DNA of 64,000 nt, from the IMG/VR virus record IMGVR_UViG_3300025098_000012, positions 62,001 to 126,000 of that record; one strand, written 5' to 3'. The translations under genes and the position numbers were made by a program. This document shows positions 8,960-43,610 of the stretch, piece after piece; the first letter of the stretch is position 1, and every line of letters begins with the position of its first letter. The notes under the pieces were generated by a model. That model did no database searches and was not told where the DNA came from. It saw only the letters and a program-made list of their open reading frames with translations.

Positions 8960-9152
8960 TGGGGTCTACCTTTCTCTTTTTCTTTTGTAGTTCCCACTTA
9001 GCGAGTGCTTGTTCGAGGACAGCTAAGTTACCTAAGTCCTCTTGTAGTTTACCCTCATAGTGTGCTTGAAGCGTCCTTAAGTTTTCTAGGAGCTTCCCTA
9101 CCTCAGTGCCATTAAGGTTTGGCTCTTCGGGTGTCTTTTTCCACTTACTCAT
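8952..9152 (-). CDS. Small coiled-coil protein
   Basis: Overlap-coupled to both neighbours. Confidence 0.65.
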   Translation of the reverse strand: MSKWKKTPEEPNLNGTEVGKLLENLRTLQAHYEGKLQEDLGNLAVLEQALAKWELQKKKRKVDPNG

Positions 9153-15100: not shown

Positions 15101-18100
15101 TCTTTGGACTGACAAAGATGTTGCCCCTTTGTCAATCTTGTACTTAGGAATCACCATCCCACTTGATGTCCGAACTGTGCCATCTCCTCCGTTAGACTTT
15201 AAGGTCGTATAAGACACTTTCACAGATGTGGTACTCGCCACCTCAAAAGAGAAGCGTATTGTGTCTTGGCTGATACTATAAAGACTTGCGTTAATTTGTT
15301 CAGGTCCTACAAACACTGTCGGTGTGGCTAATAACTCTACTTCTTTACCTGTAGGGTTGTAGGTGAACTGAAAACCATCCACCCTTGTCGCTTCTTCTTG
15401 AATGACTACAAAGCCCATCGCTTCAATGACACGAACACCATTAGGATCATCTGTCGGTGTGTAAGATACCTCTACACCAACACCCTCCTCTAAAGGATCT
15501 TCAAAGCTGATTGCACCACTAGTTGCTTCAAATCTTGGGTTCGCTAACAGCTCTAAGAAATCATCAAAGGGATCGGGATCAAATGGGGTCGTGAGCGTTA
15601 AACTCAAATCCATCTCGGCTGTATCTACCAAGCCACTACGAGGCTTCCTTACAAAGACCACCTCACCATCTACCCAACTGCTGTTCGCTACTCCCATAGG
15701 GCTTTCAAAAACAACCCTGTTATCTGTGACTGTAAAACCCTTCTCTACATTCTCACCTTCTTTGGTATGACCGACACCTACTTCGTATTCTATTTCTCCT
15801 ACCTTAATGCGATATGATCCACTCGTGTAATGATCTCCACTCAACTCGTAAGGAGATAATAACACCTCGTCCCTTAACACAGTTAAAGGATATGCGTCAT
15901 CTCCCTTACGGATAAACAAAGTTGAGCTAGGCAACACCTTGTCAAAAGCAAGCGTTCCATACACCTTGTATATCTCTACTGCCTTACGCTCCAACACAGG
16001 TAGATCATCTAAAATCTCTCCCACTACCTTTGTAGGATCTGGTGTCTCCGTTTCCTCTAACCCCTCTCTATACCCTCTGTAAATCTTCCATCTCCCAAGC
16101 TGAATACCCAACGCTGAACTAAGCGTAAGCACACTCCCTGTGATCAACTCAATCTTAAAATAGTTTAATCCGTCATAAAAGAAATCACCCTGTCTCACCA
16201 AACTGAGATCCAACCCCAAGTCTAAATCGACCCCTGTTAATGACCCAACCTTTTGCCCCGATAAGACCTCTGAACCTAAACGATTGATTAAACGAGCTTG
16301 ACCCTCTAACCCATCACTCGGCAAGTCATAGTCAACCCCTTCTGTTAAAGGCTGAGTCGAGATAGTACCGTTCAACTGCTCTTGGGTGATCGTGATAGAT
16401 GTCGTACCTACCCTTAATCCAGATCCCAATGCCAAGCGTGATGTCTCTTGGTTCACCTTAGAACTTACTGTGCGACCTACAATCCAATGAAACCCATTCG
16501 GGTTGCCACCAAATGATGTCTCTATGTCCGTTTCCCCAAGTACCTTATCTCCTATCTTGAAAAACTTGCCGGCTTCATAACCTGTGAAATCAAAGCGTGG
16601 CTCAAACTGTAAAAACTGAAACGCTGTGCTACCACTTATGTCGGCTACCTTCTCCTCATCAAAAGAATAATAACCCTTGACTGATGAACGAGTTAAAACA
16701 AACTCAAGCCCTGTCTCCAAACTCGAACTCGGCACAAGACCAATAGACCTTAATGACTCAAACTCTCCTGTCGTTGATGGATGATCTACAACAGATCCAG
16801 AGTCCACTACCAAATAACCGTCTACTACTGAGACTCCCGAACCTACCACATTCTCCCCTGTAAACGATACCACTCCACCGTCCACCTTAAATGAACCACT
16901 CTTGCCCGATAAACCCAAAATGCTCATGTGCCTTAATCCCCCTCTGCTTAAAGCTACATGACCACCGAAAATCTTCTTCGTCTGATTAGACCAAGCACGA
17001 CTCAATACAACACTCGTTGTGCCTTGTACTAAATAACCACGATGGACTGATAGCCTCTTAGGGAGCTTCTCTACTAACTCCACAGGTAATGTGCGACCTA
17101 ACTCCACTAAACGAACATACATTCGCTCATATCTGTAATCCCACTTCAAACCCACTCCACTAGGTCTAAATGAACTCGCCACTCCACTAGGCTCTAATCC
17201 CGAACCATCTGGTATATCCATCTTCTCTACTAATGTTAAACCATTTACTCCTGCTCCCACACCAATAGGGGCATCACATAAAACCAAACCATCATAAATC
17301 ACAGGTGAGCTAGATAAAATCTTTCCACTGTCTAACGCTACCTTCACCACACCATATTCTGCGTCTACTAAATCACCCTCTGTCGCTACATACACCACAT
17401 CACTGTAGCCATATCCTGCGACTCTCAATAAAGGGTACTCATTTAATCTCGGCTGTGGCGATAAATAGTCCGACACCCCTACAACATTCGACTCAAATCC
17501 TCCAAGAGATCCAGATATATACAACACCTCCTTACCCACATGATCACTGCCATCCTTAAATAAAACCTTGCCCGATGGATTTAAGACCACACCCTCTGCT
17601 CCATTACTAAACGCACCATCTTCTTCTCCCTCCGCTACTACAGGGAAATCATCTCCATTTATCTCAAATACTGTGACTGACGCATCAGCTACATTACCAC
17701 CTCCTATCCTTAACTCTCCCTCCAATCCTGCTATGATGTCATCCTCACCACCTACCACCCCAACTACAATACCAGATCCTCCCCTTAATAATGACCAACC
17801 CCTGTTCTCATAATCAAATCTAACCCTACTCGCATCATTACGAGTCCACCAAAATAATCCACCACATACTCCCGAACCCTCCACACTATCCAAATTATCA
17901 CGAGCTGAATGAACCACCGTACCACCAAAGAAATGATCTAACGCAACACCATTCTCATCAAGCACCGAACTTAACCATACACGACTGTTCGTTAAGTAAT
18001 AATAGACTCCATCAATCGCTGTCTCAAATAACTTCTCAAAACTAACATCCACACTCTCAACACCTATCTCTCCATCTCCACTAGAAATCAAAGCATAAGA

Positions 18101-18262
18101 GTCTACACCTGTATTACCTATCTCATATAGATCACGACCTACACGCTCCCAACGACCATCTACTTGAACAACACTCCCATCCACTACTCGTAAACATAAA
18201 CCAGTAGATGAAGCATTACGCTCTCCACTACGAACATCTAATATAATACTTCGTGAACTCAT
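9149..18262 (-). CDS. Giant (3037 aa) beta-rich virion structural protein (baseplate/tail-associated)
   Basis: Uninterrupted 9.1-kb ORF rich in V/G/S/T/D; recurring GD.L.I...G...V motifs. Confidence 0.7.
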   Translation of the reverse strand: MSSRSIILDVRSGERNASSTGLCLRVVDGSVVQVDGRWERVGRDLYEIGNTGVDSYALISSGDGEIGVESVDVSFEKLFETAIDGVYYYLTNSRVWLSSVLDENGVALDHFFGGTVVHSARDNLDSVEGSGVCGGLFWWTRNDASRVRFDYENRGWSLLRGGSGIVVGVVGGEDDIIAGLEGELRIGGGNVADASVTVFEINGDDFPVVAEGEEDGAFSNGAEGVVLNPSGKVLFKDGSDHVGKEVLYISGSLGGFESNVVGVSDYLSPQPRLNEYPLLRVAGYGYSDVVYVATEGDLVDAEYGVVKVALDSGKILSSSPVIYDGLVLCDAPIGVGAGVNGLTLVEKMDIPDGSGLEPSGVASSFRPSGVGLKWDYRYERMYVRLVELGRTLPVELVEKLPKRLSVHRGYLVQGTTSVVLSRAWSNQTKKIFGGHVALSRGGLRHMSILGLSGKSGSFKVDGGVVSFTGENVVGSGVSVVDGYLVVDSGSVVDHPSTTGEFESLRSIGLVPSSSLETGLEFVLTRSSVKGYYSFDEEKVADISGSTAFQFLQFEPRFDFTGYEAGKFFKIGDKVLGETDIETSFGGNPNGFHWIVGRTVSSKVNQETSRLALGSGLRVGTTSITITQEQLNGTISTQPLTEGVDYDLPSDGLEGQARLINRLGSEVLSGQKVGSLTGVDLDLGLDLSLVRQGDFFYDGLNYFKIELITGSVLTLSSALGIQLGRWKIYRGYREGLEETETPDPTKVVGEILDDLPVLERKAVEIYKVYGTLAFDKVLPSSTLFIRKGDDAYPLTVLRDEVLLSPYELSGDHYTSGSYRIKVGEIEYEVGVGHTKEGENVEKGFTVTDNRVVFESPMGVANSSWVDGEVVFVRKPRSGLVDTAEMDLSLTLTTPFDPDPFDDFLELLANPRFEATSGAISFEDPLEEGVGVEVSYTPTDDPNGVRVIEAMGFVVIQEEATRVDGFQFTYNPTGKEVELLATPTVFVGPEQINASLYSISQDTIRFSFEVASTTSVKVSYTTLKSNGGDGTVRTSSGMVIPKYKIDKGATSLSVQRDFTSILGAGDLIYVGTQIFNVVSVSASSIDVSPPARVNIETEMIAYLNVPSFTYGGTTSSYAFRTVNNANVTSKPKSPDILIQGDYRDFIKAKSIVVLQGTPYRVVVVGLDDVTGMTKVTVEGFTSGHDFISTNDFHVSFRPVLIEGDTSLTLTTGIVDTESFQIIKYNHTLGRGRLLTLNEDYNFNSEAGLIDLKNGHDVRPQVSYYLLHTALSAVKPFTLLGGRVSKPTYKAIFNQSKTPEEYDGLGLNVSCVVSSPDTFQVRVADEDAYSSEIANELQQSLNQDTGSGGKLVVSSPTSQGKAIGVYGLLANDVVARSRINLYNGYVQPIDDILSTTTGKVVGDADGSFKFNLLTAGDWISPGMEDHITREIYPRYVSMEFLTPLNPSNHYPTPEDTIKINGEPPEAKVLASILEQQRPLIENEMDDYVLIRQKEKTVFDFDAGFPYVRVEYDPVYSPMWNKHRFSRLFPTSTRMYSYRNPGALDSSTNGITIANAQNNALGQIENISSLPVVSRRSARFRVYDFSLNGYPSVAETAGKPTFILSAVPLDEFPIDPSTGLPDTTQFVSEGGEVADALVGNVDRTFNGLQTNSKVRISRNGGEFHNVLNTAEQATLLELGLFPPLSLQSEPRNAKVEAIVSGCYVVLKGSVFTLKINGESLVENPPKRGDTLIESFARDLDDDSSPSTVFRVGSDIGLKSSTGEIVDISLPSISEPNWPVKEIVGQNVPASGLALEGSVEFLYTETVPFRYPALDGEAVDDTGDESIPYKSRFSERDLLPQIPPALDALQVQTSNAISGVDEYAYPDEARGTASIGSDVITTNEDFSLLNGICEQAPRQGDLLILKPDSSASTGVLEIAEINGTEILPPAHTSPGEVSCTIQNLQADFRQFPNGIFIEEDWPLNAQNGLYDRSELKIYFYHATIQELFNNPSTGLEITLHVHNFGGNSTAPYENAHSFIFEYDGASWTVKLKNELTNAVTTVPNLSVSATMPSELTVVQDPVPNPFDPATETWADPTDMQSWLFDSYWDSVNHFYNPVYIPGSTSYIFTQEQNGVMRPSSYRLSVKSNAVISNNRIDVVFPTNRVPHAVIEIDPDPTIDLTGGADTDQKLIIEGTTLAIKEEGGVNTGTITSDVNDGTFDFSSVNSTTLRPKHLEGISRINDPMSIFIGSEVDEDDTILKGSARSGLIEVDSTDPANPVIVGDSVKGILRNVTPLHGSTAQVLAGDLLYIENGHNAGTHRVLDAIDPDINTEITETLGTSQVLTVQFPKVVSLDTATGVLTTDVADLTQYFSDTTTGSIYIILNDNYTNTPTPTLDSTSALVKDPVFGVSIIKVDYNLISDSDMTLVFPCEYADGTAIADATALNTILGEYSQVIGGVTKIPFNLGNTGLAKDGLYSSFGVDLTLQMTVGGGRTGTTNAFSESGVVRENGLVTHITLDVSDANLYPDIVDSGGQNYGKPFLSPNDTITLTVKLDAGIYLDPTFPRLLRDYTGNTPVEFADGSSQVRSPIESTLTNLPQPAWDFYEEVNFTVRRLRRFTDVFSKLIYAFEGFRYLYEQRVGRVDSVVYANSVATLTPRTVDGEGVFDASGGTDTQVGDFANVVSVGDQVQCVNDSNQETLYLRVLEVGATLKCSVIRGAVSAVSNNDVFKVITRVPLIPELQAFDQFIEHGFTEIYSTDPVAGISVIEEDKLTDTNANFIALGVAEGDFLVIDPQGALAGSNPTEYGASPQGDNGDGTQGLPNSLDDNRGAYKVVSVDDANTLEVEFYAGDSGTSRSTYKLLPSVNGDDAQPLRVTSDIVGSSYATTNDSIHPFSYRILRRRTTLGESLAGSFLFFRERTLSWVEVIRSFNQLPTQPYTWSQYEAEELIDNVGITDNSHPSNDLLLQSILGNKASKPFENNETCLSVYDRRMLIEDPKMADEGYGLPEDGIPTVLENDISSMNARDSRYAWISVRTDQVNGTLSKLSRVDLSNPDDTALEDIK

Positions 18263-26061: not shown

Positions 26062-26508
26062 TTAAAGTTTATCATCGAGCCAAGAGAGATCCAGCGTCCA
26101 ATTATGTTTGGATCTCTCATTCCATTGCTCAAAGACTTGAACGATGTAGTCCTCAGTCTCTTGAGGTGTGAGGCTATTGACGGAGGCAAGTTTGTGTAGT
26201 ACCTGCGATTGAACTTGGGGCGACTCTACTGAGAGGGTTCGCCCGATGTGTTTGACCTTGTGGCAGGTAGGGCAGAGAGAAATCAGACCTTTGAGAGTTT
26301 GGGTCTTGGTCTGATCGTCATAATCCCATATCTCGTGGCACTCAACAGGCCACTTAGACCCTTTGCCTCCACAGACTTCGCATTTGTACCCTGCTTGCTT
26401 GTAAGAGGCTTTGCGTAACTTATCCCATTGGGGTTTAGAGAGGTTAGCTTCAGAGCGTAGGTTATTGCCCCATGATGATTGTGGTACGAGTTCAATCGAG
26501 AGCTTCAT
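26062..26508 (-). CDS. HNH endonuclease
   Basis: CEVCG...ECHE.W.YD...LCPTCHKVKH. Confidence 0.85.
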   Translation of the reverse strand: MKLSIELVPQSSWGNNLRSEANLSKPQWDKLRKASYKQAGYKCEVCGGKGSKWPVECHEIWDYDDQTKTQTLKGLISLCPTCHKVKHIGRTLSVESPQVQSQVLHKLASVNSLTPQETEDYIVQVFEQWNERSKHNWTLDLSWLDDKL

Positions 26509-27254
26509 TTTTCACACCTTGCGTATTGAGTTGATCTTAGTTGAACCCCTGCTTTTTTAAGTCTCCGAGCAATCGTGGCATAACTGACCTTATATTTTTC
26601 AGCCAACTGTACGGTGGATAAACCCGACTCATATTCTTTAATCATTTGATCAAGAGGTAATTTAAACTTCTCCCTACCAGATTCTCTTAGTCGAACCCCT
26701 GCTTTTTTAAGTTTCCTGTTAATCGTGGTGAAGCTGACCTTATATTTTTCAGCTAACTGTACGGTGGATAAACCCGACTCATATTCTTTGATCATTTGAT
26801 CAAGGGGTAAGTTTAACTTCTCCCTACCTGCATCCCTCAAAGAATACCCTGCTTTCTTAAATCTCCTATGTAAAGCGGATGGGTACACACCATACTTTTC
26901 AGATAAGTCATATAAATTCAGTCCCGACTCATATTCTTTAATTATTTGATCAAGGGGTAGATTTAATCTTTTCCCACAAGGTCTTATTCCCACTCCTGCA
27001 CCTCTGAGTAGACGAGTAACTGTAGTAGCTGACACCTTGTATTTATTAGCTACTTGATAAGTAGTTAAACCAGAATGATAATCTGCAATCACATCTTGTA
27101 TTGGCAGGAGAATTCTTTTGCCTCTTAACTGAACTCCAGCTTTCTTTAATCTGTCAAGAATCGTAGTTGTGCTAACTCCATATCTTGAGGCTAGATCTTT
27201 GGTAGACATACCAGTGTTGTATTCGGTGATGATTTCATCTACAGGTAGCTTCAT
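26505..27254 (-). CDS. Protein with five tandem ~50-aa HTH repeats
   Basis: Repeats of LP.D..I.EY.SG.S...LA.KY.VS..TI...LKKAGV.LR. Confidence 0.85.
   Translation of the reverse strand: MKLPVDEIITEYNTGMSTKDLASRYGVSTTTILDRLKKAGVQLRGKRILLPIQDVIADYHSGLTTYQVANKYKVSATTVTRLLRGAGVGIRPCGKRLNLPLDQIIKEYESGLNLYDLSEKYGVYPSALHRRFKKAGYSLRDAGREKLNLPLDQMIKEYESGLSTVQLAEKYKVSFTTINRKLKKAGVRLRESGREKFKLPLDQMIKEYESGLSTVQLAEKYKVSYATIARRLKKAGVQLRSTQYARCEK
26543..26827 (-). repeat. Near-identical 150-bp-period duplication encoding the last two HTH repeats
   Basis: 26543-26677 versus 26693-26827. Confidence 0.85.
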
Positions 27255-32864: not shown

Positions 32865-33055
32865 GAGGAAATGCTCCCTCACACTAGGATATAAATAAGG
32901 GGTTACACTATATACACATACGAATGATAGGATCTCCAACAAGAAGCGTAAGTACTTGATTACCTAGCAAAAAGCCTAAAGTGTAACCCCTTATCTATAG
33001 AGTAGTGTAGGGCGATCAAGCCTACCAACCAATCACTCCCACTAAGGAGAACAAA

Positions 33056-36197: not shown

Positions 36198-36294
36198 TTA
36201 TAGATTTCTAACTTGTGGCCCGAAGCTGTAACCCCTTATTTATAACTTAGTATCGGGGCAATGAAGCCCACTCACTCTGACAAGGAGAACCAAC

Positions 36295-36819
36295 ATGAAC
36301 AGCGTAAACATCACAGCCGACAACTTTCTCTCAGCACTCCTCGCCCCTTTCGGTGGCAAGGACACCCACAGCGAGTCGGGAGAGCCTCTCCCAAGCTCAA
36401 CTTCAAAGGCATGGACTTTCACGCTCCATAACACAGAGCGTGACACTCACCTCACCTTCAAGTCTCGCCGCCCGAAGGGGTGGACGGTCGATAGCCCCGT
36501 CTTGATCGACCTCATGGTCGGTACGGACAACAGCTCTGACTTCGGATTCATCGGGAGCGTTAGCTCTCGTGGGTTCTACAAGGCATCACCTAAGAGCAAG
36601 GTGGACGCTGACCGTAAGGCTGTCGCTGATCGTACCCTCGTGTGGCTTCTAACCAAGCTCAACAATGGACAGGAGCTTCCCGAAGCTCTTGAGATGAAGG
36701 GTGCTTCTAAGTGCTGTCGCTGTGCAAGGAAGCTCACCAACCCCGACTCGGTAAATGATGGGATGGGTCCTATCTGTCGCAAGAAGGCTAACGACAGCAA
36801 GGTTAGTCGAGGGGCTTAA
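36295..36819 (+). CDS. DUF6011-like Zn-ribbon protein
   Basis: CCRCARKLTNPDSVNDGMGPIC. Confidence 0.8.
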   Translation: MNSVNITADNFLSALLAPFGGKDTHSESGEPLPSSTSKAWTFTLHNTERDTHLTFKSRRPKGWTVDSPVLIDLMVGTDNSSDFGFIGSVSSRGFYKASPKSKVDADRKAVADRTLVWLLTKLNNGQELPEALEMKGASKCCRCARKLTNPDSVNDGMGPICRKKANDSKVSRGA

Positions 36820-36991
36820 GGTCTAGGGTGGGTCGGAGCTGAAAAGCTCTTAGAAGAGCATTTAAGAGCTTAATGGAAAAAGGAATAACGACTATGTTTT
36901 CGGGGGTTTGGAGTTCGTAACCCCTTATTTATAGAGTAGTGTAAGGGGAACAATCCCCACCAACCAATCACTCCAACAAGGAGAACAAGAC

Positions 36992-37294
36992 ATGATCGAC
37001 TTAACCAACTACCCAATGCTCAACAAGCGTCAGAACACCCCCTTCTTCGCAGACCTCACCAATGAGGATCGTGTGATGAATGTCAACGGAAGCCCCATGA
37101 GCTTGGGTGTGTGGAACATGATCGTGAGCTACCGAGATCTCAAGCTCTGGTGTCGGCTCGGCATGAAGCCCCATCGTGGGTGGAAGGTGAGCCACGCTAA
37201 GGCTTACTTCGGCATCAAGGGCAACAAGGACAAGCTCTTGAGCGAGTTTGAAGCACTCAAAGCTGAGGTCGATGAGATCCTCGGACGAGGCTAA
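36992..37294 (+). CDS. Hypothetical protein (cassette gene)
   Basis: Full leader plus SD. Confidence 0.8.
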   Translation: MIDLTNYPMLNKRQNTPFFADLTNEDRVMNVNGSPMSLGVWNMIVSYRDLKLWCRLGMKPHRGWKVSHAKAYFGIKGNKDKLLSEFEALKAEVDEILGRG

Positions 37295-37375
37295 CAATCG
37301 GGAGGCGTAACCCCTTATCTATACCATAGTGTAAGAGGGATTGACCCTCACCAACTACTCAAGGAGAAAAAAAGA

Positions 37376-37696: not shown

Positions 37697-37889
37697 GAGA
37701 GGTCGGACTGAGGTAATGTAAGAGGGGAGCAATCCTTGAGCGTAAGGTTAAGAGGGGCAACTTAATCCAGAAGCTAGACATCTAGGGGTGGCGAGGTCTG
37801 AGCGTTATAGTGGGATAAGTCGTAACCCCTTATCTATAAGATTGTAAGAGGAACGATCCTCTTAGACTACACTCCAGAAAGGGAGAACA

Positions 37890-38486
37890 ATGCCAAAGGC
37901 ACACAACATCTTCTTAGCGTCCGTCCTCGTGATCATGGGGTTCGGCATCAACGCAGGTAAAAACGCTTTTGAGGGCAGGGCTGTTTACCACAGTTCTTGT
38001 TCGATCAGTTCTAATCCTGTGCAGTATCAGCATCATACAGGCACGATAAGCGTGAGGAGATGGTGGTATGTGGACACGACCACAGGAGCTAAGATCAAGG
38101 CAACTAAGGCACAACATGAGGCTTGTGAGAGCGTGAAAGTTCTCATGTCGAGTGAGGCTGAAGTTGCTGAATCTGAGAGGCTTGAAGATGTCGCCAATAA
38201 CTGGATCATCTTCTCGTTCGCTTGGTTTGGTCTTGGGTTCTTGGTTGAGTTCGCCACCACCTACCTTGCTAAGAGGCGAGAGCGTCTTGAGTGGGAGAGA
38301 GCTGACCGAGAGCGAGAGCTTGAGTGGAAGCGAGACTGTGAGATGTGGGAAGCGAAGCGAGAAGATGAGAAAGCCGAGAGGCAGAGGTCTAAGACAGCGA
38401 ATGAAGAACGAGCAAGACGAAAGGCTGAGAGGGGAGCAATCCTTGAGGCTAGAAGGCTTGCGAACTTAGAGCGTAAGAAAGGATAA
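37890..38486 (+). CDS. Membrane protein with charged C-terminal coil
   Basis: Two hydrophobic segments; E/R-rich tail. Confidence 0.75.
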   Translation: MPKAHNIFLASVLVIMGFGINAGKNAFEGRAVYHSSCSISSNPVQYQHHTGTISVRRWWYVDTTTGAKIKATKAQHEACESVKVLMSSEAEVAESERLEDVANNWIIFSFAWFGLGFLVEFATTYLAKRRERLEWERADRERELEWKRDCEMWEAKREDEKAERQRSKTANEERARRKAERGAILEARRLANLERKKG

Positions 38487-38490
38487 CGAG

Positions 38491-39054
38491 ATGACTTTAA
38501 GAGAGCAGATACAACAGAGAGCAGAGATGATAGGTCAGCTAGGTGGTCGAGGCGACCTTATGACGCAAGAGCAGTATGTACTCGATAAGGGTACTCAGAT
38601 GGCTTCTACTGAGCCTTTAACAGATGAGCAGTACGCTTACCTCAGAATGATCACAGGAGCGATTGAGTGCCTTCCTAAGCAGTGTTTCTACAATGCTCAG
38701 ATGATGACACTTACGGACAGCTATCATGAGACACAGAGGGTCAAGTACCACGAGGGCTATGTGTGGACGGGGATCATGCCGATCCTTCATGGTTGGATCA
38801 CTCTTGACGGTAAGATAGTGGATGTAACACTCAGCACCGATCCACAGTCAACGCAACGCTTCTTTGATGGAGAGCCACCACGAGAGGACTTGATGGACAG
38901 GGTGTTAGGAGTGATCCCCGATGAGTGGGAGTATATCGGTGTGCCGATGGAGGGTGAGTATGTGGTGAGCTTCATGCTAGAGAAAATGGAGTCTCGATCC
39001 CTCATCGACAACTGGCAAGACGGATGGCCTCTGTTGAGACAGAGTGATGGTTAG
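38491..39054 (+). CDS. Transglutaminase/papain-like fold protein
   Basis: QCFYNA...EGY...HGW...IVDVT (putative C-H-D triad). Confidence 0.6.
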   Translation: MTLREQIQQRAEMIGQLGGRGDLMTQEQYVLDKGTQMASTEPLTDEQYAYLRMITGAIECLPKQCFYNAQMMTLTDSYHETQRVKYHEGYVWTGIMPILHGWITLDGKIVDVTLSTDPQSTQRFFDGEPPREDLMDRVLGVIPDEWEYIGVPMEGEYVVSFMLEKMESRSLIDNWQDGWPLLRQSDG

Positions 39055-39470
39055 CCTTTAAGTTGAGAGAGTACCTCTAGCTCTAGGATGCGAGGGTCAT
39101 CACTTGCTTCGATGGTGAGTGTGTCATCCCCCCGACTAGTCGTGATCTCCCCTTTGCGATTGATGTAAGTCTCAGTAGGTCGAGTGATCTTTGCCTTGAA
39201 GAGTTCGACACCCATCTCTTCTTTAAAGGACTTTACAAGAGCCTTGATGATGTCGGTGTCCTCCACACCTGCTGAGGAGATGCGATACTCAACAGTCTTA
39301 GTGATGAGAGGAGCGATGCCATGATCTCGGTCATCGCCCCAATATGATTTGTGGTATCCGATGGTCATGCCCTTGAGTTCCGTAGCGACAGCCACGAGGT
39401 TGTCGAAGGACGAGTTATAGTCGGTGCAAGAGTGGTTTGCGATTTTGACAGCTCGGTTGATTGCTTCCAT
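39051..39470 (-). CDS. Hypothetical protein, paralogue of 39645-40046
   Basis: GYHKSYWGDD..APL..LF...ITRPT..RKG..TT.RG..TL.I. Confidence 0.8.
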   Translation of the reverse strand: MEAINRAVKIANHSCTDYNSSFDNLVAVATELKGMTIGYHKSYWGDDRDHGIAPLITKTVEYRISSAGVEDTDIIKALVKSFKEEMGVELFKAKITRPTETYINRKGEITTSRGDDTLTIEASDDPRILELEVLSQLKG

Positions 39471-39559
39471 GTGTTCTCCTTTAGAACTTGTTGGTGATGC
39501 TCCTCTTTAAGTAAGGGGTTACATTAGCCCGTCCTTAGCTCCATAAAGAGGAGGAGGGT

Positions 39560-39584
39560 TAAATAGGAAGTGAGTTCCTATTTA
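39560..39584. repeat. 25-bp palindromic site TAAATAGGAA-GTGAG-TTCCTATTTA, copy 1
   Basis: 10-bp inverted arms, 5-bp asymmetric core; identical to 40142-40166. Confidence 0.95.
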
Positions 39585-39644
39585 GGGTTGTAACCCCCTA
39601 TTTATGAGGGTGCATCAACCACTCACTCCCAATGGAGACAAAAC

Positions 39645-40046
39645 ATGATCGACATCATCCTTAACAACGCACTCAAGAGCTTCGAGACTTACGATGAAAC
39701 CTTCAAGCGAGTGATCCCAACAGCCCATGCCGAGATCGAGAATATGAGCTATGGTTATCACAAGTCTTTCTTCGGAGATGACACCGATGTGAACGCTCCC
39801 CTCGTTCAGCGTACAGGAACATATAACCTCGTCTGCGACCCGAAGGATCACGAGGCTATCGTAGAAACTATCGCAGAGGAGTTCGCTAAGGTGGAGTCCT
39901 GTGTCAAGCTCTTCGGCATCGAGATCAGCCGACCAACTAGAACCAAGTGGGTCGCTCGTAAAGGGAAGGCCACCACTCGCAAGGGAACTACCACCCTCAA
40001 CATCACTTGGAGCGAGGACAGTCGCATCACGACTTGGAAGCTCTGA
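39645..40046 (+). CDS. Hypothetical protein, paralogue of 39051-39470
   Basis: GYHKSFFGDD..APL..LF...ISRPT..RKG..TT.KG..TL.I. Confidence 0.8.
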   Translation: MIDIILNNALKSFETYDETFKRVIPTAHAEIENMSYGYHKSFFGDDTDVNAPLVQRTGTYNLVCDPKDHEAIVETIAEEFAKVESCVKLFGIEISRPTRTKWVARKGKATTRKGTTTLNITWSEDSRITTWKL

Positions 40047-40141
40047 GATAGCTCTTAGAGAGTAGTTCGAGTCGTAGCCTTTGCCCTCACCCACCTTGAG
40101 AGGCTTAAGGCTCTTAGAGAGCAATCCGAAGCGTCTAGTTC

Positions 40142-40166
40142 TAAATAGGAAGTGAGTTCCTATTTA
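40142..40166. repeat. 25-bp palindromic site, copy 2 (direct repeat)
   Basis: Identical to 39560-39584; contains the TAG stop of 40160-40438. Confidence 0.95.
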
Positions 40167-40438
40167 ACCATGACAAGGTTATACGCAAACTTGAGCCAAT
40201 CCTCAGCGTAGTTGCCTCCTTGCCACATAAGGAGTTGCACCGAGTTTTCAAACTCTCGCCATTCAGCAAGGGTCTTATTGTTAGTGTTCATCCAGCGAGA
40301 TCTCAAGTCTCGGTAATGACCTCGTGCAAGATCTTCCCACATAGGAAGCCAACTTGACCGATCCGTCCTAGAATTACGAAGCAACTGTATAAGGTCTATG
40401 GTCGTCATTTCTCTAGTCATTTTCATGTCCTTGTTCAT
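40160..40438 (-). CDS. Hypothetical Trp-rich protein
   Basis: TCATATAA upstream. Confidence 0.6.
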   Translation of the reverse strand: MNKDMKMTREMTTIDLIQLLRNSRTDRSSWLPMWEDLARGHYRDLRSRWMNTNNKTLAEWREFENSVQLLMWQGGNYAEDWLKFAYNLVMVK

Positions 40439-40606
40439 ATAACTTGAGTACCTATTTATTATATGATTTGGAGACTGAAAATGACTTCTCTGATGAGAAG
40501 TTATCGAGGGTTTGACTCGTTCTTAAAATGGCAAATATGGGTAGGGTTTCTAGCTAGTCTATGTTAGTGATACAGCAAGCGAACTGGATCAAACACTACC
40601 GACACC

Positions 40607-41080
40607 TCATCGAACCTTAGCCAGCTCCCTATCGCAGATCTCATTCGACCTCTTCTCGAAGATGGGGCAGTTGTCCATCATGTAGCTATATGCGTCTTGC
40701 TGAAGGTCAATCCCCTTAACCGATCTAGTGTCCTTGAGGCAGGTGATGAGATAAAGCAGACGACCACTAGGAGGGTTGGGGAAAGCCCACTCCATCACTT
40801 GATCCTCCGTCATCTTAGACACGACCTCATTAAGCCAAGACTTATCTGAGTCGGTGAGAGCGAAGTCCTGTGGCTTACGGTTGAAAGCCCACCACAGCCT
40901 CATCTCCATGTGGTTGCTGATGACTCCATGCTTCTTGTAGTATGCCCTAGCGATCTTCACATCATTCTCGACAACATGGTCGATGTCCGATTGGCTGAGG
41001 GTCGGGAGGCGAGGGTTATCATTCTCTCGCTCATGGGTCTGACGGATGTGCTTGCGATACTGACTTAAGAGATTTTCCAT
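40607..41080 (-). CDS. Hypothetical protein
   Basis: SD AAAGGA; 5' hairpin leader. Confidence 0.75.
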   Translation of the reverse strand: MENLLSQYRKHIRQTHERENDNPRLPTLSQSDIDHVVENDVKIARAYYKKHGVISNHMEMRLWWAFNRKPQDFALTDSDKSWLNEVVSKMTEDQVMEWAFPNPPSGRLLYLITCLKDTRSVKGIDLQQDAYSYMMDNCPIFEKRSNEICDRELAKVR

Positions 41081-41195
41081 TGTTCGTCCTTTGCGGAGTT
41101 GGTTCGGAAGGTGAGGGTCTGATTGTCTGCCCTCTATCTAGTCAACACAGGGGCTGTCCTTTTCTTTTCAGCACATCACTTTTTGATTAAACTTT

Positions 41196-41804
41196 TTACC
41201 CACGAGGGAGCATACCCTCCCTTGAGTCAAAGTTATACTCCTCGATGATCTTGTTGATCCTCTCAAGCTGAGTAGCTACCCACTCTTGATTGCCCCCACC
41301 TTTAGTGTCGTAGTGGTGGTCGAGGAGGTGGAGATTTTGGTCAATGCTGAACAGCTCCGAACTGAGCCTCCAGTTCGCATCATCGTAGTCCTTGACGACC
41401 TGTGGTGGCAAGATCTCAACCTCCCACGCTTGATCTCTGAGGAGGTCATTAAGCTCATCCTCTCGCTCGTCCTCATCTAAGGTGGGGTCGAGCGATGCCT
41501 TAGCCGCCTCCTCATCAAACCACTCCCGATTGATGTCCCAAGGGTACACACCTTCCATGACGCAGTGGTCGCAAAGCTCCTCGTCATGGTCGTACTCGTC
41601 ATATCCGACACAGTATGATGCCATGTATCGTCCTGCCCCATTACACTCAGTGCAGACCTTAGCCTCAGCGTAGCGAGATGCTTGGAGTTTAGCCTTAGCC
41701 TCCTCTAGCTTCGCCTTGAGGGTGGGGAGGGCCTTGATCTCGCTCTCGATTTGAGCGATGAGGACTCGCTCGGAAGTTTTGATGTCTTGTAGTGATGGCA
41801 TCAT
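41196..41804 (-). CDS. Coiled-coil plus DnaJ-type Zn-finger protein
   Basis: CTECNGAG...CDHC; start re-assigned after GGAGA. Confidence 0.75.
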   Translation of the reverse strand: MMPSLQDIKTSERVLIAQIESEIKALPTLKAKLEEAKAKLQASRYAEAKVCTECNGAGRYMASYCVGYDEYDHDEELCDHCVMEGVYPWDINREWFDEEAAKASLDPTLDEDEREDELNDLLRDQAWEVEILPPQVVKDYDDANWRLSSELFSIDQNLHLLDHHYDTKGGGNQEWVATQLERINKIIEEYNFDSREGMLPRG

Positions 41805-41884
41805 ATTGATGTCTCCATTAGGAGTGAGTGAGGTGCGTGATGATTCTGCACCTCTTACATAAGGATATAGATAAGGGGTTACGC

Positions 41885-42076: not shown

Positions 42077-42355
42077 CTAGTGGTGGTAAGGGTTCATGGG
42101 AGTGCCAGGCTCAAAGCCTGTGATCAGCCACTCTCGGATTTGGACTGACCAATCCTTGAGTGCATCTTGAGCGACAGCTCCCTCAGCCCATGCAGTGAGC
42201 ATGGCGATGGCTTGAGGAGCAGGGGTGTCCACCGTTAGTGTGGTGGACACATGAACGAACATGGAGGGTGATCGAGTGAGGGTGGTCTTACCCTCAACCT
42301 CGTTGACCTCAACTGAGATCGAACCCATTGGTCTTTGATGTGTGATGGTTGTCAT
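42077..42355 (-). CDS. Hypothetical protein
   Basis: SD AAGGAGA; C-terminal REWLITG. Confidence 0.75.
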   Translation of the reverse strand: MTTITHQRPMGSISVEVNEVEGKTTLTRSPSMFVHVSTTLTVDTPAPQAIAMLTAWAEGAVAQDALKDWSVQIREWLITGFEPGTPMNPYHH

Positions 42356-42392
42356 GTTGGTTCTCCTTAGTGGTTGATACAAGGTTATCTGT

Positions 42393-42671
42393 TTAAGGGG
42401 TTACGAAGTGCTTGCTACTGCACTCGATCTCCCCTGTCTCACCGTTGATGCTGATCCCGATGTCCTCCTCTTTATCACCGTTGCGATCTAGGATGTTGAG
42501 TTGGAGGGGGGTGTCTACAGGCACATTGCGAAGCTCTCGTCCTTCCCATCCGTCTGTGGCGAAGTCGAGGATGTTCCCATTCTCATCGTACTCGCAAGCA
42601 CAGATCTCAACTTGATGGTTTCGAGAGTAGCCTGCATAGGCGAGGTAGTCTGTTTTAGTAGGTTTACGCAT
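42393..42671 (-). CDS. Hypothetical protein, paralogue of 22101-22367
   Basis: Shared motifs; last codons V-T-P-stop are encoded by the motif. Confidence 0.75.
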   Translation of the reverse strand: MRKPTKTDYLAYAGYSRNHQVEICACEYDENGNILDFATDGWEGRELRNVPVDTPLQLNILDRNGDKEEDIGISINGETGEIECSSKHFVTP

Positions 42672-42805
42672 AAGCATAAGTCCTTTCATAGTTGTCAAAG
42701 AGTTAGTAGGGCAACCACTGTCGCCCTCGATACTGTTCAATAAATAAGGGGTTACGCCAACCTGTAACCCCTTATTTATTACAAAGCATCAACCAAGGAG
42801 AACCT

Positions 42806-42955
42806 ATGTATGAACTATATGATCGCTTTGAGAAGGAGGTCGTCAAGACCTTTGCCTCTCTAGGAGAAGCAGGGTTTTACCTCGCCCAAGAGGTAGAGCA
42901 AGAGTATCGAAAAGAGCGTGGGGTGAGTCTACCTCGCTTCACTATCAACTACTAA
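42806..42955 (+). CDS. 49-aa protein not in the ORF track (MYELYDRFEK...RFTINY)
   Basis: Motif plus SD AAGGAGA. Confidence 0.75.
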   Translation: MYELYDRFEKEVVKTFASLGEAGFYLAQEVEQEYRKERGVSLPRFTINY

Positions 42956-42968
42956 GAAAGGACTGCAC

Positions 42969-43610
42969 ATGACCTTGACCCAAAAAATAAACGGGGTTCG
43001 CAAGATGATCCCGACACCACATCACAAGACTGCGTACAAGACCAAAGGGTCTATGCAGTCCTGGTATGACCGACACACCAAACTTTTCACTGAGCTTGCT
43101 GAGGAGATAGGCTTTGAGGTCAGTAAAGAGACAGGCACTCTATCCTCTTTTACGGGCACTATCTTGAACATCAAGAAGAGTGGGTTTGGGGACTTTAAGC
43201 TCACCTTGAGATGGGCTAAGGATGGTTTATCTACGGTGCGTCTATGTGGCAACAGCACTGACCATACAGTCTACCCTTATCAGACATGGCGAGGGTACGA
43301 GAAGCCTCAGTCTCATAATGATGCTCACTTGGGTAACTGGTTCCTCAAGTTGATACGATTGGATTGGGTCGCTGGTAACAGACCGAACATCCATCAGATC
43401 AAGGTCGATGATGAGATAGTGTTTAGTGGCACACCAGGTGGTGGTGGTCAACGCACACGAGCTAAGGTTGTAGGGTATGGTGGAGCATGGGGTCGTAGCT
43501 ACTTCAAGGTGTCGCTATTAGAGGAGCGAGGGGTGAAGAAGATCAAACCTGTGGGAACGGTCATGGAGGTACACTATAACTGCATCATCCACCACGAGGG
43601 CAAAGCGTAA
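42969..43610 (+). CDS. Hypothetical protein with C-terminal SH3-like segment
   Basis: IKVDDEIVF..RAKVV; stop inside the motif. Confidence 0.75.
   Translation: MTLTQKINGVRKMIPTPHHKTAYKTKGSMQSWYDRHTKLFTELAEEIGFEVSKETGTLSSFTGTILNIKKSGFGDFKLTLRWAKDGLSTVRLCGNSTDHTVYPYQTWRGYEKPQSHNDAHLGNWFLKLIRLDWVAGNRPNIHQIKVDDEIVFSGTPGGGGQRTRAKVVGYGGAWGRSYFKVSLLEERGVKKIKPVGTVMEVHYNCIIHHEGKA

What the first reader, a model, noticed from the sequence alone, without database searches (positions are those of the whole stretch)
42739..42780. Two motif copies back-to-back form a perfect 17-8-17 inverted repeat
Seen: AATAAATAAGGGGTTAC-GCCAACCT-GTAACCCCTTATTTATT, with both copies the same less common TTTATT variant. With only 8 bp between them, each element must work without unique upstream sequence. 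The geometry also resembles a loxP-type site or a cruciform. Other divergent pairs are spaced 65-76 bp apart (22828/22894, 32906/32983, 39522/39590).
Basis: partly seen in the sequence, partly recalled or inferred. Interest (0 to 1): 0.65.

Follow-up and report, generated by a model that had tools for sequence, protein, structure and literature searches.

The report
Back-to-back promoter pair of huge phage
The perfect 17-8-17 palindrome is two copies of a phage-specific promoter set back to back, each driving its own conserved gene; it is not a loxP-like site, but relatives show such promoter copies sit where genes were rearranged and that divergent pairs are spaced in steps of about one DNA helical turn.

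Summary
In detail: window 42739-42780 is a perfect 17-8-17 inverted repeat built from two copies of GTAACCCCTTATTTATT. The window belongs to an uncultured marine huge phage (226.7-kb record; also on a 345-kb contig). The 17-mer occurs about 45 times in the record, always pointing at the next gene, 22-92 nt before a strong Shine-Dalgarno sequence and start codon. I read it as a promoter of the small-gene (early-type) region. No phage RNA polymerase or sigma region 2 was found, even in a complete 376-kb relative, so host polymerase redirected by a phage factor is inferred.

Both arms head genes under purifying selection (dN/dS 0.13-0.14), so each works with only 8 bp plus the partner upstream.

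The loxP reading is not supported. Arms are mostly solitary, no site-specific recombinase was found, and source contigs show one orientation.

Two further findings:
- Relative to the 376-kb relative, window 42404-42779 is inverted, with both ends on motif copies. Other relatives show flipped spacers and swapped modules, as with PeSL cassettes.
- Spacers of divergent pairs fall at 8-9, 18-20, 30, 39-42, 52-53, 64-67 and 75-76 nt, a period of about 11.3 bp (p about 6e-5). Eight bp is the shortest in-phase spacing.

The parts
42739..42755 (-). Left arm: promoter motif copy (GTAACCCCTTATTTATT read on the minus strand), heading the leftward unit
   Evidence: It points at the 94-aa gene 42393-42677(-).
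42756..42763 (.). 8-bp spacer GCCAACCT between the two arms; the shortest member of the phased spacer series
   Evidence: The orthologous spacers are AGGCTGTC (L031), ACCAGTTC (L150), GCCAGATT (L168) and AGGCTGGTC (L164).
42764..42780 (+). Right arm: promoter motif copy GTAACCCCTTATTTATT, heading the rightward unit
42781..42801 (+). Initiation region and leader of the right unit. The conserved Y24-R25-T26 is C42787-A42788-T42789, so the inferred start is about 42788. The CATCAACCA box is at 42787-42795 and the Shine-Dalgarno AAGGAGA at 42795-42801.
   Evidence: Position-specific conservation; sequence. The start site is inferred, not mapped.
42709..42738 (-). Initiation region of the left unit (inferred start about 42731), followed by a 7-bp 5' leader hairpin, GGGCGAC-AGTG-GTTGCCC, at 42709-42726
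   Evidence: Pairing is kept through one-sided changes and one two-sided change in L031, L150 and L168 (sequences).
42393..42677 (-). 94-aa gene driven by the left arm. Its last three codons and stop (GTA ACC CCT TAA) are the first 12 bases of the next promoter copy.
   Evidence: It is 86.8% identical to its L031 homologue, dN/dS 0.13. No Pfam or PHROG match.
42388..42404 (-). Variant promoter copy GTAACCCCTTAAACAGA, heading gene 42077-42355(-). It is the left boundary of the block that is inverted relative to the 376-kb relative.
42404..42779 (.). Block inverted relative to relative G001. It comprises the variant promoter, the 94-aa gene, its leader hairpin, the left arm, the spacer and the right arm.
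   Evidence: blastn: genome 104404-104779 matches G001 357569-357189 in reverse, between forward-matching neighbours. Colinear alignment of the reverse complement, 87% identity.
42806..42955 (+). 49-aa gene, first gene of the right unit
   Evidence: It is 77.6% identical to its L031 homologue, dN/dS 0.14.
42969..43610 (+). 213-aa gene, second gene of the right unit. In the L030-type relatives it sits directly behind a tight promoter pair.
   Evidence: dN/dS 0.21.

Best explanation
The palindrome is a tight divergent promoter pair.

What each arm is. Each arm is one copy of the promoter that this phage group uses for its region of small genes of unknown function. The consensus is Y-GTAACCCCTTAT-Y-TATA, then nnnTnGT-R-T. 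Transcription is inferred to start at the conserved purine 8 nt after the 17-mer, about 42788 rightward and about 42731 leftward, 57 bp apart. The left transcript begins with a short 5' hairpin and encodes a 94-aa protein. The right one encodes 49-aa and 213-aa proteins.

Why the palindrome arises. Recognition needs nothing upstream of the 17-mer, so two copies can abut. The palindrome is a by-product of that abutment, not a unit with its own function.

Which polymerase. It is inferred to be the host RNA polymerase, retargeted by an unidentified phage factor. One candidate is a conserved 188-aa protein with two sigma-region-4-like helix-turn-helix domains.

Why 8 bp. Eight bp is the shortest spacing in a series that rises in steps of about 11.3 bp. 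The two initiation complexes would then lie about 5 + n helical turns apart, on the same face of the DNA.

Evolutionary behaviour. Repeated promoter and leader cassettes serve as recombination junctions. Genes with their promoters are inverted or swapped at them, and closely spaced arms tend to stay alike.
For: Shown:
- There are 28 copies in the window against 0.1 expected, 36 exact 12-mers in the record and 51 in relative G001, and none for the reversed controls.
- In window 19-50 kb every copy points at the next gene on its own strand. Across the whole record, 41 of 45 copies have a Shine-Dalgarno sequence plus start codon 17-137 nt downstream, most of them 22-92 nt.
- Information content covers -1 to +17, then T21, G23, T24, R25, T26 and a purine run. 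Nothing is conserved upstream.
- Leader hairpins start at motif positions 28-30.
- Both flanking genes are conserved, with dN/dS 0.13 and 0.14.
- Sigma-70-type sites show no excess: 16 found against 22.9 expected.
- No T7-like polymerase was found; the T7 positive control scored 1e-109. There is no beta or beta-prime and no sigma region 2, including in a 100%-complete relative.
- The 188-aa protein matches Sigma70_r4. Its model (pLDDT 83) resembles ECF sigma region 4.
- A second promoter class, TTAATAGTTTATTTATA, has 23 copies before baseplate, topoisomerase and other genes. It shares positions 2-4 and 9-17 with this motif.
- TTATYTATA followed by a start 7-8 nt later resembles phiEco32 gp36 promoters: tAATGTAtA with the start 6-8 bp downstream (PMC8948821).
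- Tight pairs recur in at least three independent gene contexts.
- Spacer classes give a period of 11.2-11.4 bp, R 0.79-0.81, Monte Carlo p = 6e-5 over periods 7-16 bp.
- The block inversion has both ends on motif copies. A module swap at window 36227-37323 is bounded by motif copies. A 53-nt spacer is reverse-complemented between identical flanks in L044 versus L102.
Against: - No transcription start is mapped. No RNA run holds this phage, so promoter identity and the start position rest on comparative anatomy.
- An alternative register would put the start near position 33-36: GTAACC, 16 nt, then GTRT, like phage 7-11 gp47 promoters. That register would leave the Shine-Dalgarno sequence of the shortest cassettes untranscribed.
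- The polymerase and specificity factor are not identified. The window's record is only about 73% complete, though the complete relative also lacks a polymerase.
- The independence of the 16 spacer classes was judged by sequence clustering and by eye, so the true p-value may be weaker.
- Ends of similarity blocks lie near the motif more often than random positions do (11/33 against 5.7%). This is not more than expected for intergenic positions in general. Only the true rearrangement junctions count.
- Concordance of the variable 13th base between arms (7 of 7 tight pairs) does not differ significantly from that in wide pairs (12 of 16).
Confidence: 0.8

Rival explanations
1. The palindrome is a site-specific recombination or invertible-switch site of the loxP/FRT kind. 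Two recombinase-binding arms flank an 8-bp crossover core, and recombination flips adjacent DNA.
For: - The geometry is 17-8-17.
- Relatives show inversions whose ends lie in inverted motif copies and flipped spacers.
- The phage encodes a tyrosine-recombinase-fold enzyme, a type IB topoisomerase, and the motif contains CCCTT, the poxvirus topoisomerase IB cleavage pentamer. That last point is from my own knowledge and was not tested.
Against: - About 40 of 45 motif copies are solitary and gene-coupled.
- No serine recombinase was found. The only tyrosine-recombinase-fold hit scores better as Topoisom_I (8.6e-12) than as an integrase, and lies 76 kb away.
- Contigs from the two source metagenomes cross the site colinearly, with no strand-changing joint.
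- The core is only 5-6/8 conserved among orthologues.
- One inversion breakpoint lies in the leader box CATCAACCA rather than at the core.
Confidence: 0.05
2. The 17-mers are promoters of a phage-encoded single-subunit (T7-like or N4-like) RNA polymerase that starts directly after the 17-mer. The pair is then a back-to-back pair of such promoters.
For: The layout is T7-like: 17 bp, an A/T-rich 5' end, a specificity block in the middle and CTATA at the 3' end, as at T7 positions -5 to -1 (own knowledge; motif). Two classes differ mainly in a 4-nt block, as T7 and T3 promoters do. Many large ORFs have no annotation.
Against: - PF00940 finds T7 RNA polymerase at 1e-109 but nothing in this record, in a 100%-complete relative or in three further relatives.
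- No RxxxK(6-7)YG motif occurs outside the DNA polymerase, and there is no DxDGD motif in ORFs of 250 aa or more.
- The base after the 17-mer is not conserved, whereas positions 21-26 are.
- The 3037-aa ORF is G/V/S/T-rich and looks fibrous.
Confidence: 0.1
3. The hairpin acts as a bidirectional transcription terminator or another RNA structure, rather than as two promoters.
For: The stem is stable (-15.8 kcal/mol). Nearly identical AAGGGGTTAC-loop-GTAACCCCTT hairpins followed by T-runs lie next to tRNA genes in unrelated metagenome contigs (L152-L155, L159, L160, L165, L166, L169).
Against: The flanking genes diverge from the site, so no known transcript runs into it. Each half occurs alone about 40 times, always upstream of a gene. 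The T-rich tract is inside the stem, and the terminator scan did not call it. The tRNA-flanked look-alikes have only the two hairpin copies and no phage context.
Confidence: 0.02
4. The perfect dyad is an operator for a dimeric regulator, or a replication or packaging signal using a cruciform, superimposed on the promoters.
For: The symmetry is perfect over 17 bp. In the L030-type pair the arms are identical for 22 nt. The variable 13th base is concordant between arms in 7 of 7 tight pairs, although it differs among orthologous pairs.
Against: Orthologous pairs in L031, L150, L151 and L164 are imperfect, at 15-16 of 17, so perfection is not required. Symmetry follows automatically from two copies of one motif, and gene conversion between close inverted repeats explains the concordance. 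There is no composition or skew landmark at the site.
Confidence: 0.05

Closest known systems
PeSL cassettes (promoter-early stem-loop) of T4-type phages (Arbiol et al. 2010, PMC2839356; Comeau et al. 2014, PMC4122927)
   Same: Both are short regulatory cassettes repeated dozens of times, mostly before small genes of unknown function in a plastic genome region. Each runs from the promoter to the Shine-Dalgarno sequence and start codon and carries a stem-loop. Recombination between copies shuffles promoter-plus-gene modules between related phages (for PeSLs; here).
   Different: PeSL promoters match the host sigma-70 consensus (-35, -10, A/T-rich upstream), and their stem-loops act as terminators placed around the promoter. 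Here the motif has no -35 element and no sigma-70 match. The stem-loop lies downstream, in the leader. The phage is unrelated to T4. Tight back-to-back pairs and phased spacing were not part of what I read of the PeSL papers (abstracts and one section).
Single-element promoters of phage-encoded sigma factors: phiEco32 gp36 (tAATGTAtA) and phage 7-11 gp47 (GTAAtg-N16-aCTA) (PMC8948821)
   Same: An A/T-rich 9-mer, TTATYTATA, matches tAATGTAtA at 7 of 9 positions. It lies 7-8 nt before the conserved pyrimidine-purine step, against a start 6-8 bp downstream in phiEco32. There is no -35 element. GTAA also opens the 7-11 motif.
   Different: No sigma region 2 protein is encoded in six related records. 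An extra invariant block, GTAACCCC, abuts the 9-mer. The start site is not mapped here.
T7-group phage promoters
   Same: A highly conserved 17-mer ending in CTATA, with promoter classes that differ in a short specificity block.
   Different: No single-subunit polymerase gene was found. The position after the 17-mer is not conserved, and conservation resumes at +4 to +9.
loxP / FRT recombination sites
   Same: Inverted arms around an 8-bp spacer.
   Different: The arms are 17 bp rather than 13 bp and are mostly solitary. There is no cognate recombinase, and no alternative orientation appears in the source assemblies.
Back-to-back divergent promoters of bacteria and phages, and helically phased regulatory sites
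   Same: Two promoters share an intergenic region and fire outward. Spacing constraints with an in-vivo helical repeat near 11 bp are known for looping and activator or UP-element placement (own knowledge).
   Different: Here the phasing concerns the distance between the two promoters themselves, across many unrelated spacers in a phage group. The two cores are only 8 bp apart.

Membership tests
loxP/FRT-type tyrosine-recombinase site | Two inverted binding arms flanking a 6-8 bp core | tested here: met
   Perfect 17-8-17 repeat.
loxP/FRT-type tyrosine-recombinase site | A cognate site-specific recombinase is encoded, usually nearby | tested here: not met
   No resolvase/invertase was found in G000 or G001. 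The single PF00589 hit is a type IB topoisomerase (Topoisom_I 8.6e-12) 76 kb away.
loxP/FRT-type tyrosine-recombinase site | Arms occur as paired sites, not as dozens of solitary half-sites | tested here: not met
   There are 45 copies and only a few are in pairs. All are gene-coupled.
loxP/FRT-type tyrosine-recombinase site | Both orientations or products co-exist in a population | tested here: inconclusive
   Source-metagenome contigs show one orientation and no joint. Contigs drop rare variants, and no raw reads were available.
T7-like single-subunit RNA polymerase promoter | The phage encodes a T7-family RNA polymerase | tested here: not met
   PF00940 is absent from G000-G004, including a 100%-complete relative. 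The T7 control scored 1e-109. No motif B outside the DNA polymerase.
T7-like single-subunit RNA polymerase promoter | Conserved initiating nucleotide directly after the about 17-bp element | tested here: not met
   Position 18 counts are A16/C4/G12/T13. Conservation resumes at positions 21-26.
Sigma-70-type promoter (and PeSL in the strict sense) | -35 and -10 hexamers, TTGACA-N17-TATAAT | tested here: not met
   Nothing is conserved where a -35 element would lie. The sigma-70 scan found 16 sites against 22.9 expected, none at the motif.
PeSL-like mobile regulatory cassette (functional sense) | Repeated promoter cassettes before ORFans in a plastic region, with rearrangement junctions in the cassettes | tested here: met
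   There are 26 copies in window 20.7-46.8 kb before small unannotated genes. The inversion, module swap and spacer flip have their ends in cassettes.
PeSL-like mobile regulatory cassette (functional sense) | The stem-loop acts as a terminator or attenuator for upstream transcription | not testable with these tools
   Here the stem-loops start at motif positions 28-30, downstream of the inferred start. Their role as 5' stabiliser, processing site or attenuator is unknown.
phiEco32 gp36-type single-element promoter | A conserved A/T-rich 9-mer 6-8 bp upstream of the start, with no -35 element | tested here: inconclusive
   TTATYTATA with Y24-R25 7-8 nt downstream, against tAATGTAtA. The start is not mapped.
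phiEco32 gp36-type single-element promoter | A phage-encoded sigma factor with region 2 | tested here: not met
   PF04542 is absent from six related records. TIGR02937 matches region-4-like segments only.
Intrinsic (bidirectional) terminator | G+C-rich hairpin followed by a U-tract at the end of converging transcription units | tested here: not met
   The genes diverge from the site. The T-rich tract lies inside the stem, and the terminator scan did not call it.

The most novel reading that the evidence does not exclude
In this group of marine huge phages, which lack any polymerase or sigma region 2 gene, promoters may form a higher-order system. Divergent promoters would be held an integral number of helical turns apart (8 + about 11.3n bp) because the two initiation complexes, or a phage-encoded sigma-4-like factor bound at each, interact on one face of the DNA. 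The same inverted promoter cores would be active substrates for a flip-flop recombination that inverts promoter-bounded gene modules. That recombination might be catalysed at the invariant CCCTT by the phage's own type IB topoisomerase. If so, gene regulation and genome shuffling would share one sequence element.
Probability: 0.12. Interest if true: 0.8.

Novelty: new variant of a known kind. Interest (0 to 1): 0.5.

Why it matters
The palindrome itself is ordinary once understood: two promoters placed back to back. The system behind it is not described in the searchable literature; a search for the motif found only unrelated primers.

- A widespread group of uncultured marine huge phages (more than 100 IMG/VR stretches hold the motif) uses a 17-bp promoter with no sigma-70 features, yet encodes no polymerase or canonical sigma. 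How their first genes are transcribed is therefore an open question.
- The tight pair gives the minimal promoter by natural experiment: nothing upstream of position -1 is needed.
- The 11.3-bp quantisation of divergent-pair spacing is a simple prediction about promoter-promoter interplay that can be tested at the bench.
- The motif-bounded inversions extend the PeSL idea of regulatory cassettes as engines of modular shuffling beyond T4-type phages.
- For annotation, the motif and its sister class mark transcription units and temporal classes in genomes where almost no protein has a name.

Tried and rejected
- RNA evidence: no RNA run holds the phage, so starts could not be mapped.
- Rfam and tRNA scans of the window found nothing.
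- megablast against GenBank phages found nothing. The best protein-level relative is an unannotated 485-kb uncultured phage that lacks the motif.
- Host inference from the motif in 185,579 genomes gave single chance hits in unrelated taxa. One 'MAG: bacterium AUK107' has several motif-bearing contigs and is probably a binned phage.
- Polymerase hunt: PF00940, PF00562, PF00623 and PF04542, plus catalytic-motif regexes, were all negative. The 3037-aa ORF as an N4-like virion polymerase has no support.
- Ends of similarity blocks are enriched near the motif (11/33 against 5.7% for random positions). I rejected this as evidence because about one third of intergenic positions in that region are motif-proximal anyway. 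Only true rearrangement junctions were used.
- I considered that each arm's A/T block serves as an UP element for its partner. Solitary copies show no A/T enrichment upstream, so I did not adopt this.
- Metagenome hits with tRNA flanks or only two motif copies (L149, L152-L155, L157, L159-L163, L165, L166, L169, and L034/L162) were excluded from the spacing analysis as unrelated hairpins.
- The large inversion between G000 185.7-226.7 kb and G001 does not end at a motif and was not used.

Full report
1. OBSERVATION

Window 42739-42780 reads AATAAATAAGGGGTTAC-GCCAACCT-GTAACCCCTTATTTATT, a perfect 17-8-17 inverted repeat that ends exactly at 17 bp. The 17-mer with up to 3 mismatches occurs 28 times in the window against 0.10 expected by chance. 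The TTTATT ending is rare: 4 of 45 copies in the record, two of them here. As single-stranded DNA the repeat folds at -15.8 kcal/mol, z = -7.4.

2. CONTEXT

- The window is bases 62001-126000 of a 226,698-bp IMG/VR virus record with CheckV completeness 73%. The same sequence lies on a 345,452-bp marine metagenome contig (L148).
- Sequencing runs that hold it are marine or seawater metagenomes, and none is RNA.
- GenBank phages give no nucleotide match. The DNA polymerase is 45.6% identical to that of an unannotated 485-kb uncultured phage.
- Most proteins, including all those around the site, have no Pfam or PHROG match.
- This is an uncultured marine huge phage of unknown host.

3. WHAT THE MOTIF IS

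Counts. The core GTAACCCCTTAT with up to 1 mismatch occurs 45 times in the record. The exact 12-mer occurs 36 times in the record and 51 times in a complete 375,691-bp relative (G001). The reversed-sequence control gives zero in both.

Gene coupling. In window 19-50 kb every copy points at the next gene on its own strand. Across the record, 41 of 45 copies are followed by a strong Shine-Dalgarno sequence (AAGGAGAAC type) and a start codon, mostly within 22-92 nt.

Conservation. The conserved positions are: a pyrimidine at -1; positions 1-16; A17; then T21, G23, T24, R25, T26; then a purine run at 28-32. Nothing upstream is conserved.

Leader. In most longer leaders a hairpin begins at positions 28-30, followed by a CCAACCAMTCACTCC-like tract and the ribosome-binding site.

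Inference. I infer a promoter with transcription starting at the pyrimidine-purine step at positions 24-25. The hairpin would then sit at the 5' end of the RNA. In the shortest cassettes the Shine-Dalgarno sequence begins at position 28, so the start cannot lie much further downstream.

Distribution. The motif is dense in window 20.7-46.8 kb (26 copies), the region of small unannotated genes. That suggests an early-type class.

Second class. A second motif, TTAATAGTTTATTTATA, has 23 copies. None falls in that region, and several precede baseplate, topoisomerase and other larger genes. It shares positions 2-4 and 9-17 with the first motif and differs mainly at 5-8. The common 3' half, TTATYTATA, therefore looks like the melting or -10-like element, and the GTAACCCC block like a class-specific element.

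4. WHICH POLYMERASE

- Sigma-70-type sites are not enriched (16 against 22.9 expected), and the motif has no -35 element.
- No T7-family polymerase is found in this record, in the 100%-complete relative or in three further relatives. T7 itself scores 1e-109 in the same search.
- No beta or beta-prime domains are found. No sigma region 2 is found in six records. No polymerase catalytic motifs occur in the large ORFs.
- The only sigma-like protein is a 188-aa protein at genome about 162.2-162.8 kb, next to a NusG/KOW-like protein and a clamp-loader fragment. It has two tandem region-4-like helix-turn-helix domains.
- That family is confined to this phage group. Its model (pLDDT 83) resembles ECF sigma region 4 domains at TM about 0.7-0.77 over 60-70 residues, although the whole-chain E-values are weak.

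I therefore infer host RNA polymerase redirected by a phage factor. The factor is not identified.

The nearest published geometry is the phiEco32 gp36 promoter, tAATGTAtA with the start 6-8 bp downstream and no -35 element. Phage 7-11 gp47 promoters begin with GTAAtg (PMC8948821).

5. THE PAIR ITSELF

- The left arm is the only possible promoter of the 94-aa gene 42393-42677(-). The right arm is the only possible promoter of the 49-aa gene 42806-42955(+) and the 213-aa gene 42969-43610(+), because the units diverge.
- All three genes are conserved in G001 with dN/dS of 0.13, 0.14 and 0.21.
- The left leader hairpin keeps its pairing through substitutions in four genomes.
- The inferred starts are 57 bp apart.

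6. RELATIVES

The 16-mer occurs in more than 109 IMG/VR stretches.

Tight pairs with 8-9 nt spacers recur in three independent gene contexts.

(a) The window's own block.
- It is found with 8 nt in G001 (L031/L037), L150 and L168, and with 9 nt in L164, where the 94-aa gene is mostly deleted.
- The spacers are 5-6/8 alike.

(b) L030/L032/L036/L038.
- Here a 9-nt pair joins the homologue of gene 42969 to the homologue of gene 37890.
- The arms are identical for 22 nt.

(c) L151/L171, with an 8-nt spacer.

A contig in run X4 suggests a further tight pair, between the homologues of genes 39051 and 39645.

7. REARRANGEMENTS AT THE CASSETTES

- The reverse complement of window 42370-42790 aligns colinearly, at 87% identity, with G001 (L031:8660-9110). 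The alignment covers the far-arm core, the spacer (AGGTTGGC against AGGCTGTC), the near arm, the hairpin, the gene, the variant promoter GTAACCCCTTAA and the leader box CATCAACCAC.
- By blastn, genome 104404-104779 (window 42404-42779) is the only inverted segment in the small-gene region. Both of its ends lie on motif copies.
- In G001 the far arm drives a different gene, and the variant promoter drives the 49-aa gene.
- In the L030-type phages the segment equivalent to window 37822-41882 is inverted. It is bounded by inward-facing copies at 37822(+) and 41882(-).
- Two adjacent promoter-plus-gene modules (window 36227-37323) are in swapped order in G001.
- L044 and L102 share both flanks, but their 53-nt spacer is reverse-complemented. 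L146, L123 and G000 150858 show the same kind of flip.

This matches the PeSL concept of T4-type phages, in which repeated promoter cassettes act as points of modular exchange (PMC2839356, PMC4122927). The promoter type here is different.

The general enrichment of similarity-block ends near motifs is not significant against an intergenic null, and I do not rely on it.

8. SPACING

Spacers between divergent copies in phage-type loci cluster at 8, 8, 9, 18, (20), 30, 39, 41, 42, 52, 52, 53, 53, 64-65, 66, 67 and 75-76 nt. I reduced these to 16 conservatively independent classes.
- The best period is 11.2-11.4 bp.
- Mean resultant length is 0.79-0.81.
- 6 in 100,000 random sets reach this value when periods from 7 to 16 bp are scanned (a first pass is).
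- The fit at 10.5 bp is poorer (0.45).
- With the start at position 25, the starts lie 57 + 11.3n bp apart, that is about 5 + n turns, on the same face of the DNA.

This explains why the closest pairs have 8-9 nt and never 0-7 or 10-17. The cause (steric fit, cooperative binding or a shared factor) is unknown. The independence of the classes is my judgement.

9. ARM IDENTITY

The variable 13th base (C or T) is the same in both arms in all 7 tight pairs, although it differs among orthologous pairs: window T/T, L031 C/C, L150 C/C, L168 T/T. In wide pairs 12 of 16 agree. This hints at gene conversion between close inverted repeats, but it is not statistically secure. Perfect symmetry is not required, since orthologues are 15-16 of 17.

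10. THE loxP AND CRUCIFORM READING

- Most arms are solitary.
- No serine recombinase is encoded.
- The single tyrosine-recombinase-fold hit is a type IB topoisomerase (Topoisom_I 8.6e-12) 76 kb away.
- Contigs of the two source metagenomes cross the site in one orientation without joints. Contigs cannot show rare forms.
- The motif contains CCCTT, the cleavage pentamer of poxvirus type IB topoisomerases. This is from my own knowledge and is untested. I keep a topoisomerase-assisted exchange only as a low-probability novel reading.
- Cruciform extrusion cannot be tested here.

11. VERDICT

The feature is real and is best explained as a minimal-distance divergent pair of a phage-specific promoter. 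The palindrome is a consequence, not a separate device.

The interest lies in three things:
- the undescribed promoter system of polymerase-less huge phages;
- the helically quantised spacing;
- the cassette-bounded rearrangements.

No alternative genetic code was used.

Noticed in passing
G000:C1, 23 sites, e.g. window 58992(+) and 62738(+); genome 13662(-), 16054(-), 180810(+), 219085(+): A second repeated promoter-like motif, TTAATAGTTTATTTATA (23 copies with up to 1 mismatch in its 13-nt core). It is absent from the small-gene region. It lies upstream of baseplate-region genes, the topoisomerase IB gene and a repeated gene family. It shares positions 2-4 and 9-17 with the GTAACCCC motif, so it is probably a different temporal class.
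   Followed up: partly
Spacers of wide divergent pairs: window 32907-32982 (box at about 32949-32961); L085, L054, L063, L117, L171: A conserved 13-nt box, TAAGTRYTTGATT, lies 20-21 nt upstream of one arm in at least six unrelated longer spacers, in either orientation relative to the pair. It may be an operator or activator site. It is absent from tight pairs (sequences).
   Followed up: partly
G000:C1:180844-182277 (L173:910-2343:+), outside the window: A 477-aa protein matches the eukaryotic/poxvirus-type topoisomerase I catalytic core (PF01028, 8.6e-12) and is conserved in the 376-kb relative. The early-type promoter core contains CCCTT, the poxvirus topoisomerase IB site (own knowledge). 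Any link is untested.
   Followed up: partly
G000:C1:162212-162778 (L023:1198-1764:-) and its neighbour L023:1769-2287:-: A 188-aa protein with two tandem sigma-region-4-like helix-turn-helix domains, confined to this phage group, lies next to a KOW/NusG-like 'antiterminator' (PHROG 6386) and a clamp-loader lid fragment. It is a candidate promoter-specificity module.
   Followed up: partly
window 42388-42404: The 94-aa gene ends inside the next promoter copy: its last codons and stop are GTA ACC CCT TAA, the first 12 bases of the motif. In G001 the gene ends 17 nt before the motif, so a small deletion fused coding sequence and promoter.
   Followed up: yes
window 9149-18262 (-): A 3037-aa ORF rich in G, V, S and T, with strong negative GC skew over its 5' part. 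It has no match in Pfam, PHROGs, NCBIfam or PDB sequences. It is probably a fibrous virion protein, since tail-like genes lie nearby.
   Followed up: partly
window 26505-27254 (-): A 249-aa protein made of four tandem helix-turn-helix repeats, with many weak HTH family matches. A 143-aa relative with two repeats lies at L024:1357-1788.
   Followed up: no
L152-L155, L159, L160, L165, L166, L169 (metagenome contigs): Hairpins with the same 12-nt arms (ATAAGGGGTTAC-loop-GTAACCCCTTAT), loops of 6-11 nt and T-runs sit beside tRNA genes in unrelated organisms. They are ordinary terminators that match the search pattern by chance, a trap for pattern searches.
   Followed up: yes
Genome 153965, 165137, 167861, 212836, 219085 and others: Several copies of the second motif are followed by a nearly identical leader (..ATAAGTGATCTCTTTAACCTTAAACCAATGGAGAAAAACC) and an ORF beginning MRRS. 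This is a dispersed multi-copy gene family with its own cassette.
   Followed up: no
G000 versus G001, genome 185.7-226.7 kb; LR745208.1 285053-289945: A segment of about 40 kb is inverted between this record and the 376-kb relative, and its visible end is not at a motif. In the 485-kb GenBank relative the DNA polymerase match is split into three pieces, which suggests inserts such as inteins or introns there.
   Followed up: no
L216, L221, L230, L231, L246 (JAGGVT01, 'MAG: bacterium isolate AUK107'): A GenBank 'bacterial' MAG has at least five contigs with the phage promoter motif. It is probably a member of this phage group binned as a bacterium.
   Followed up: no
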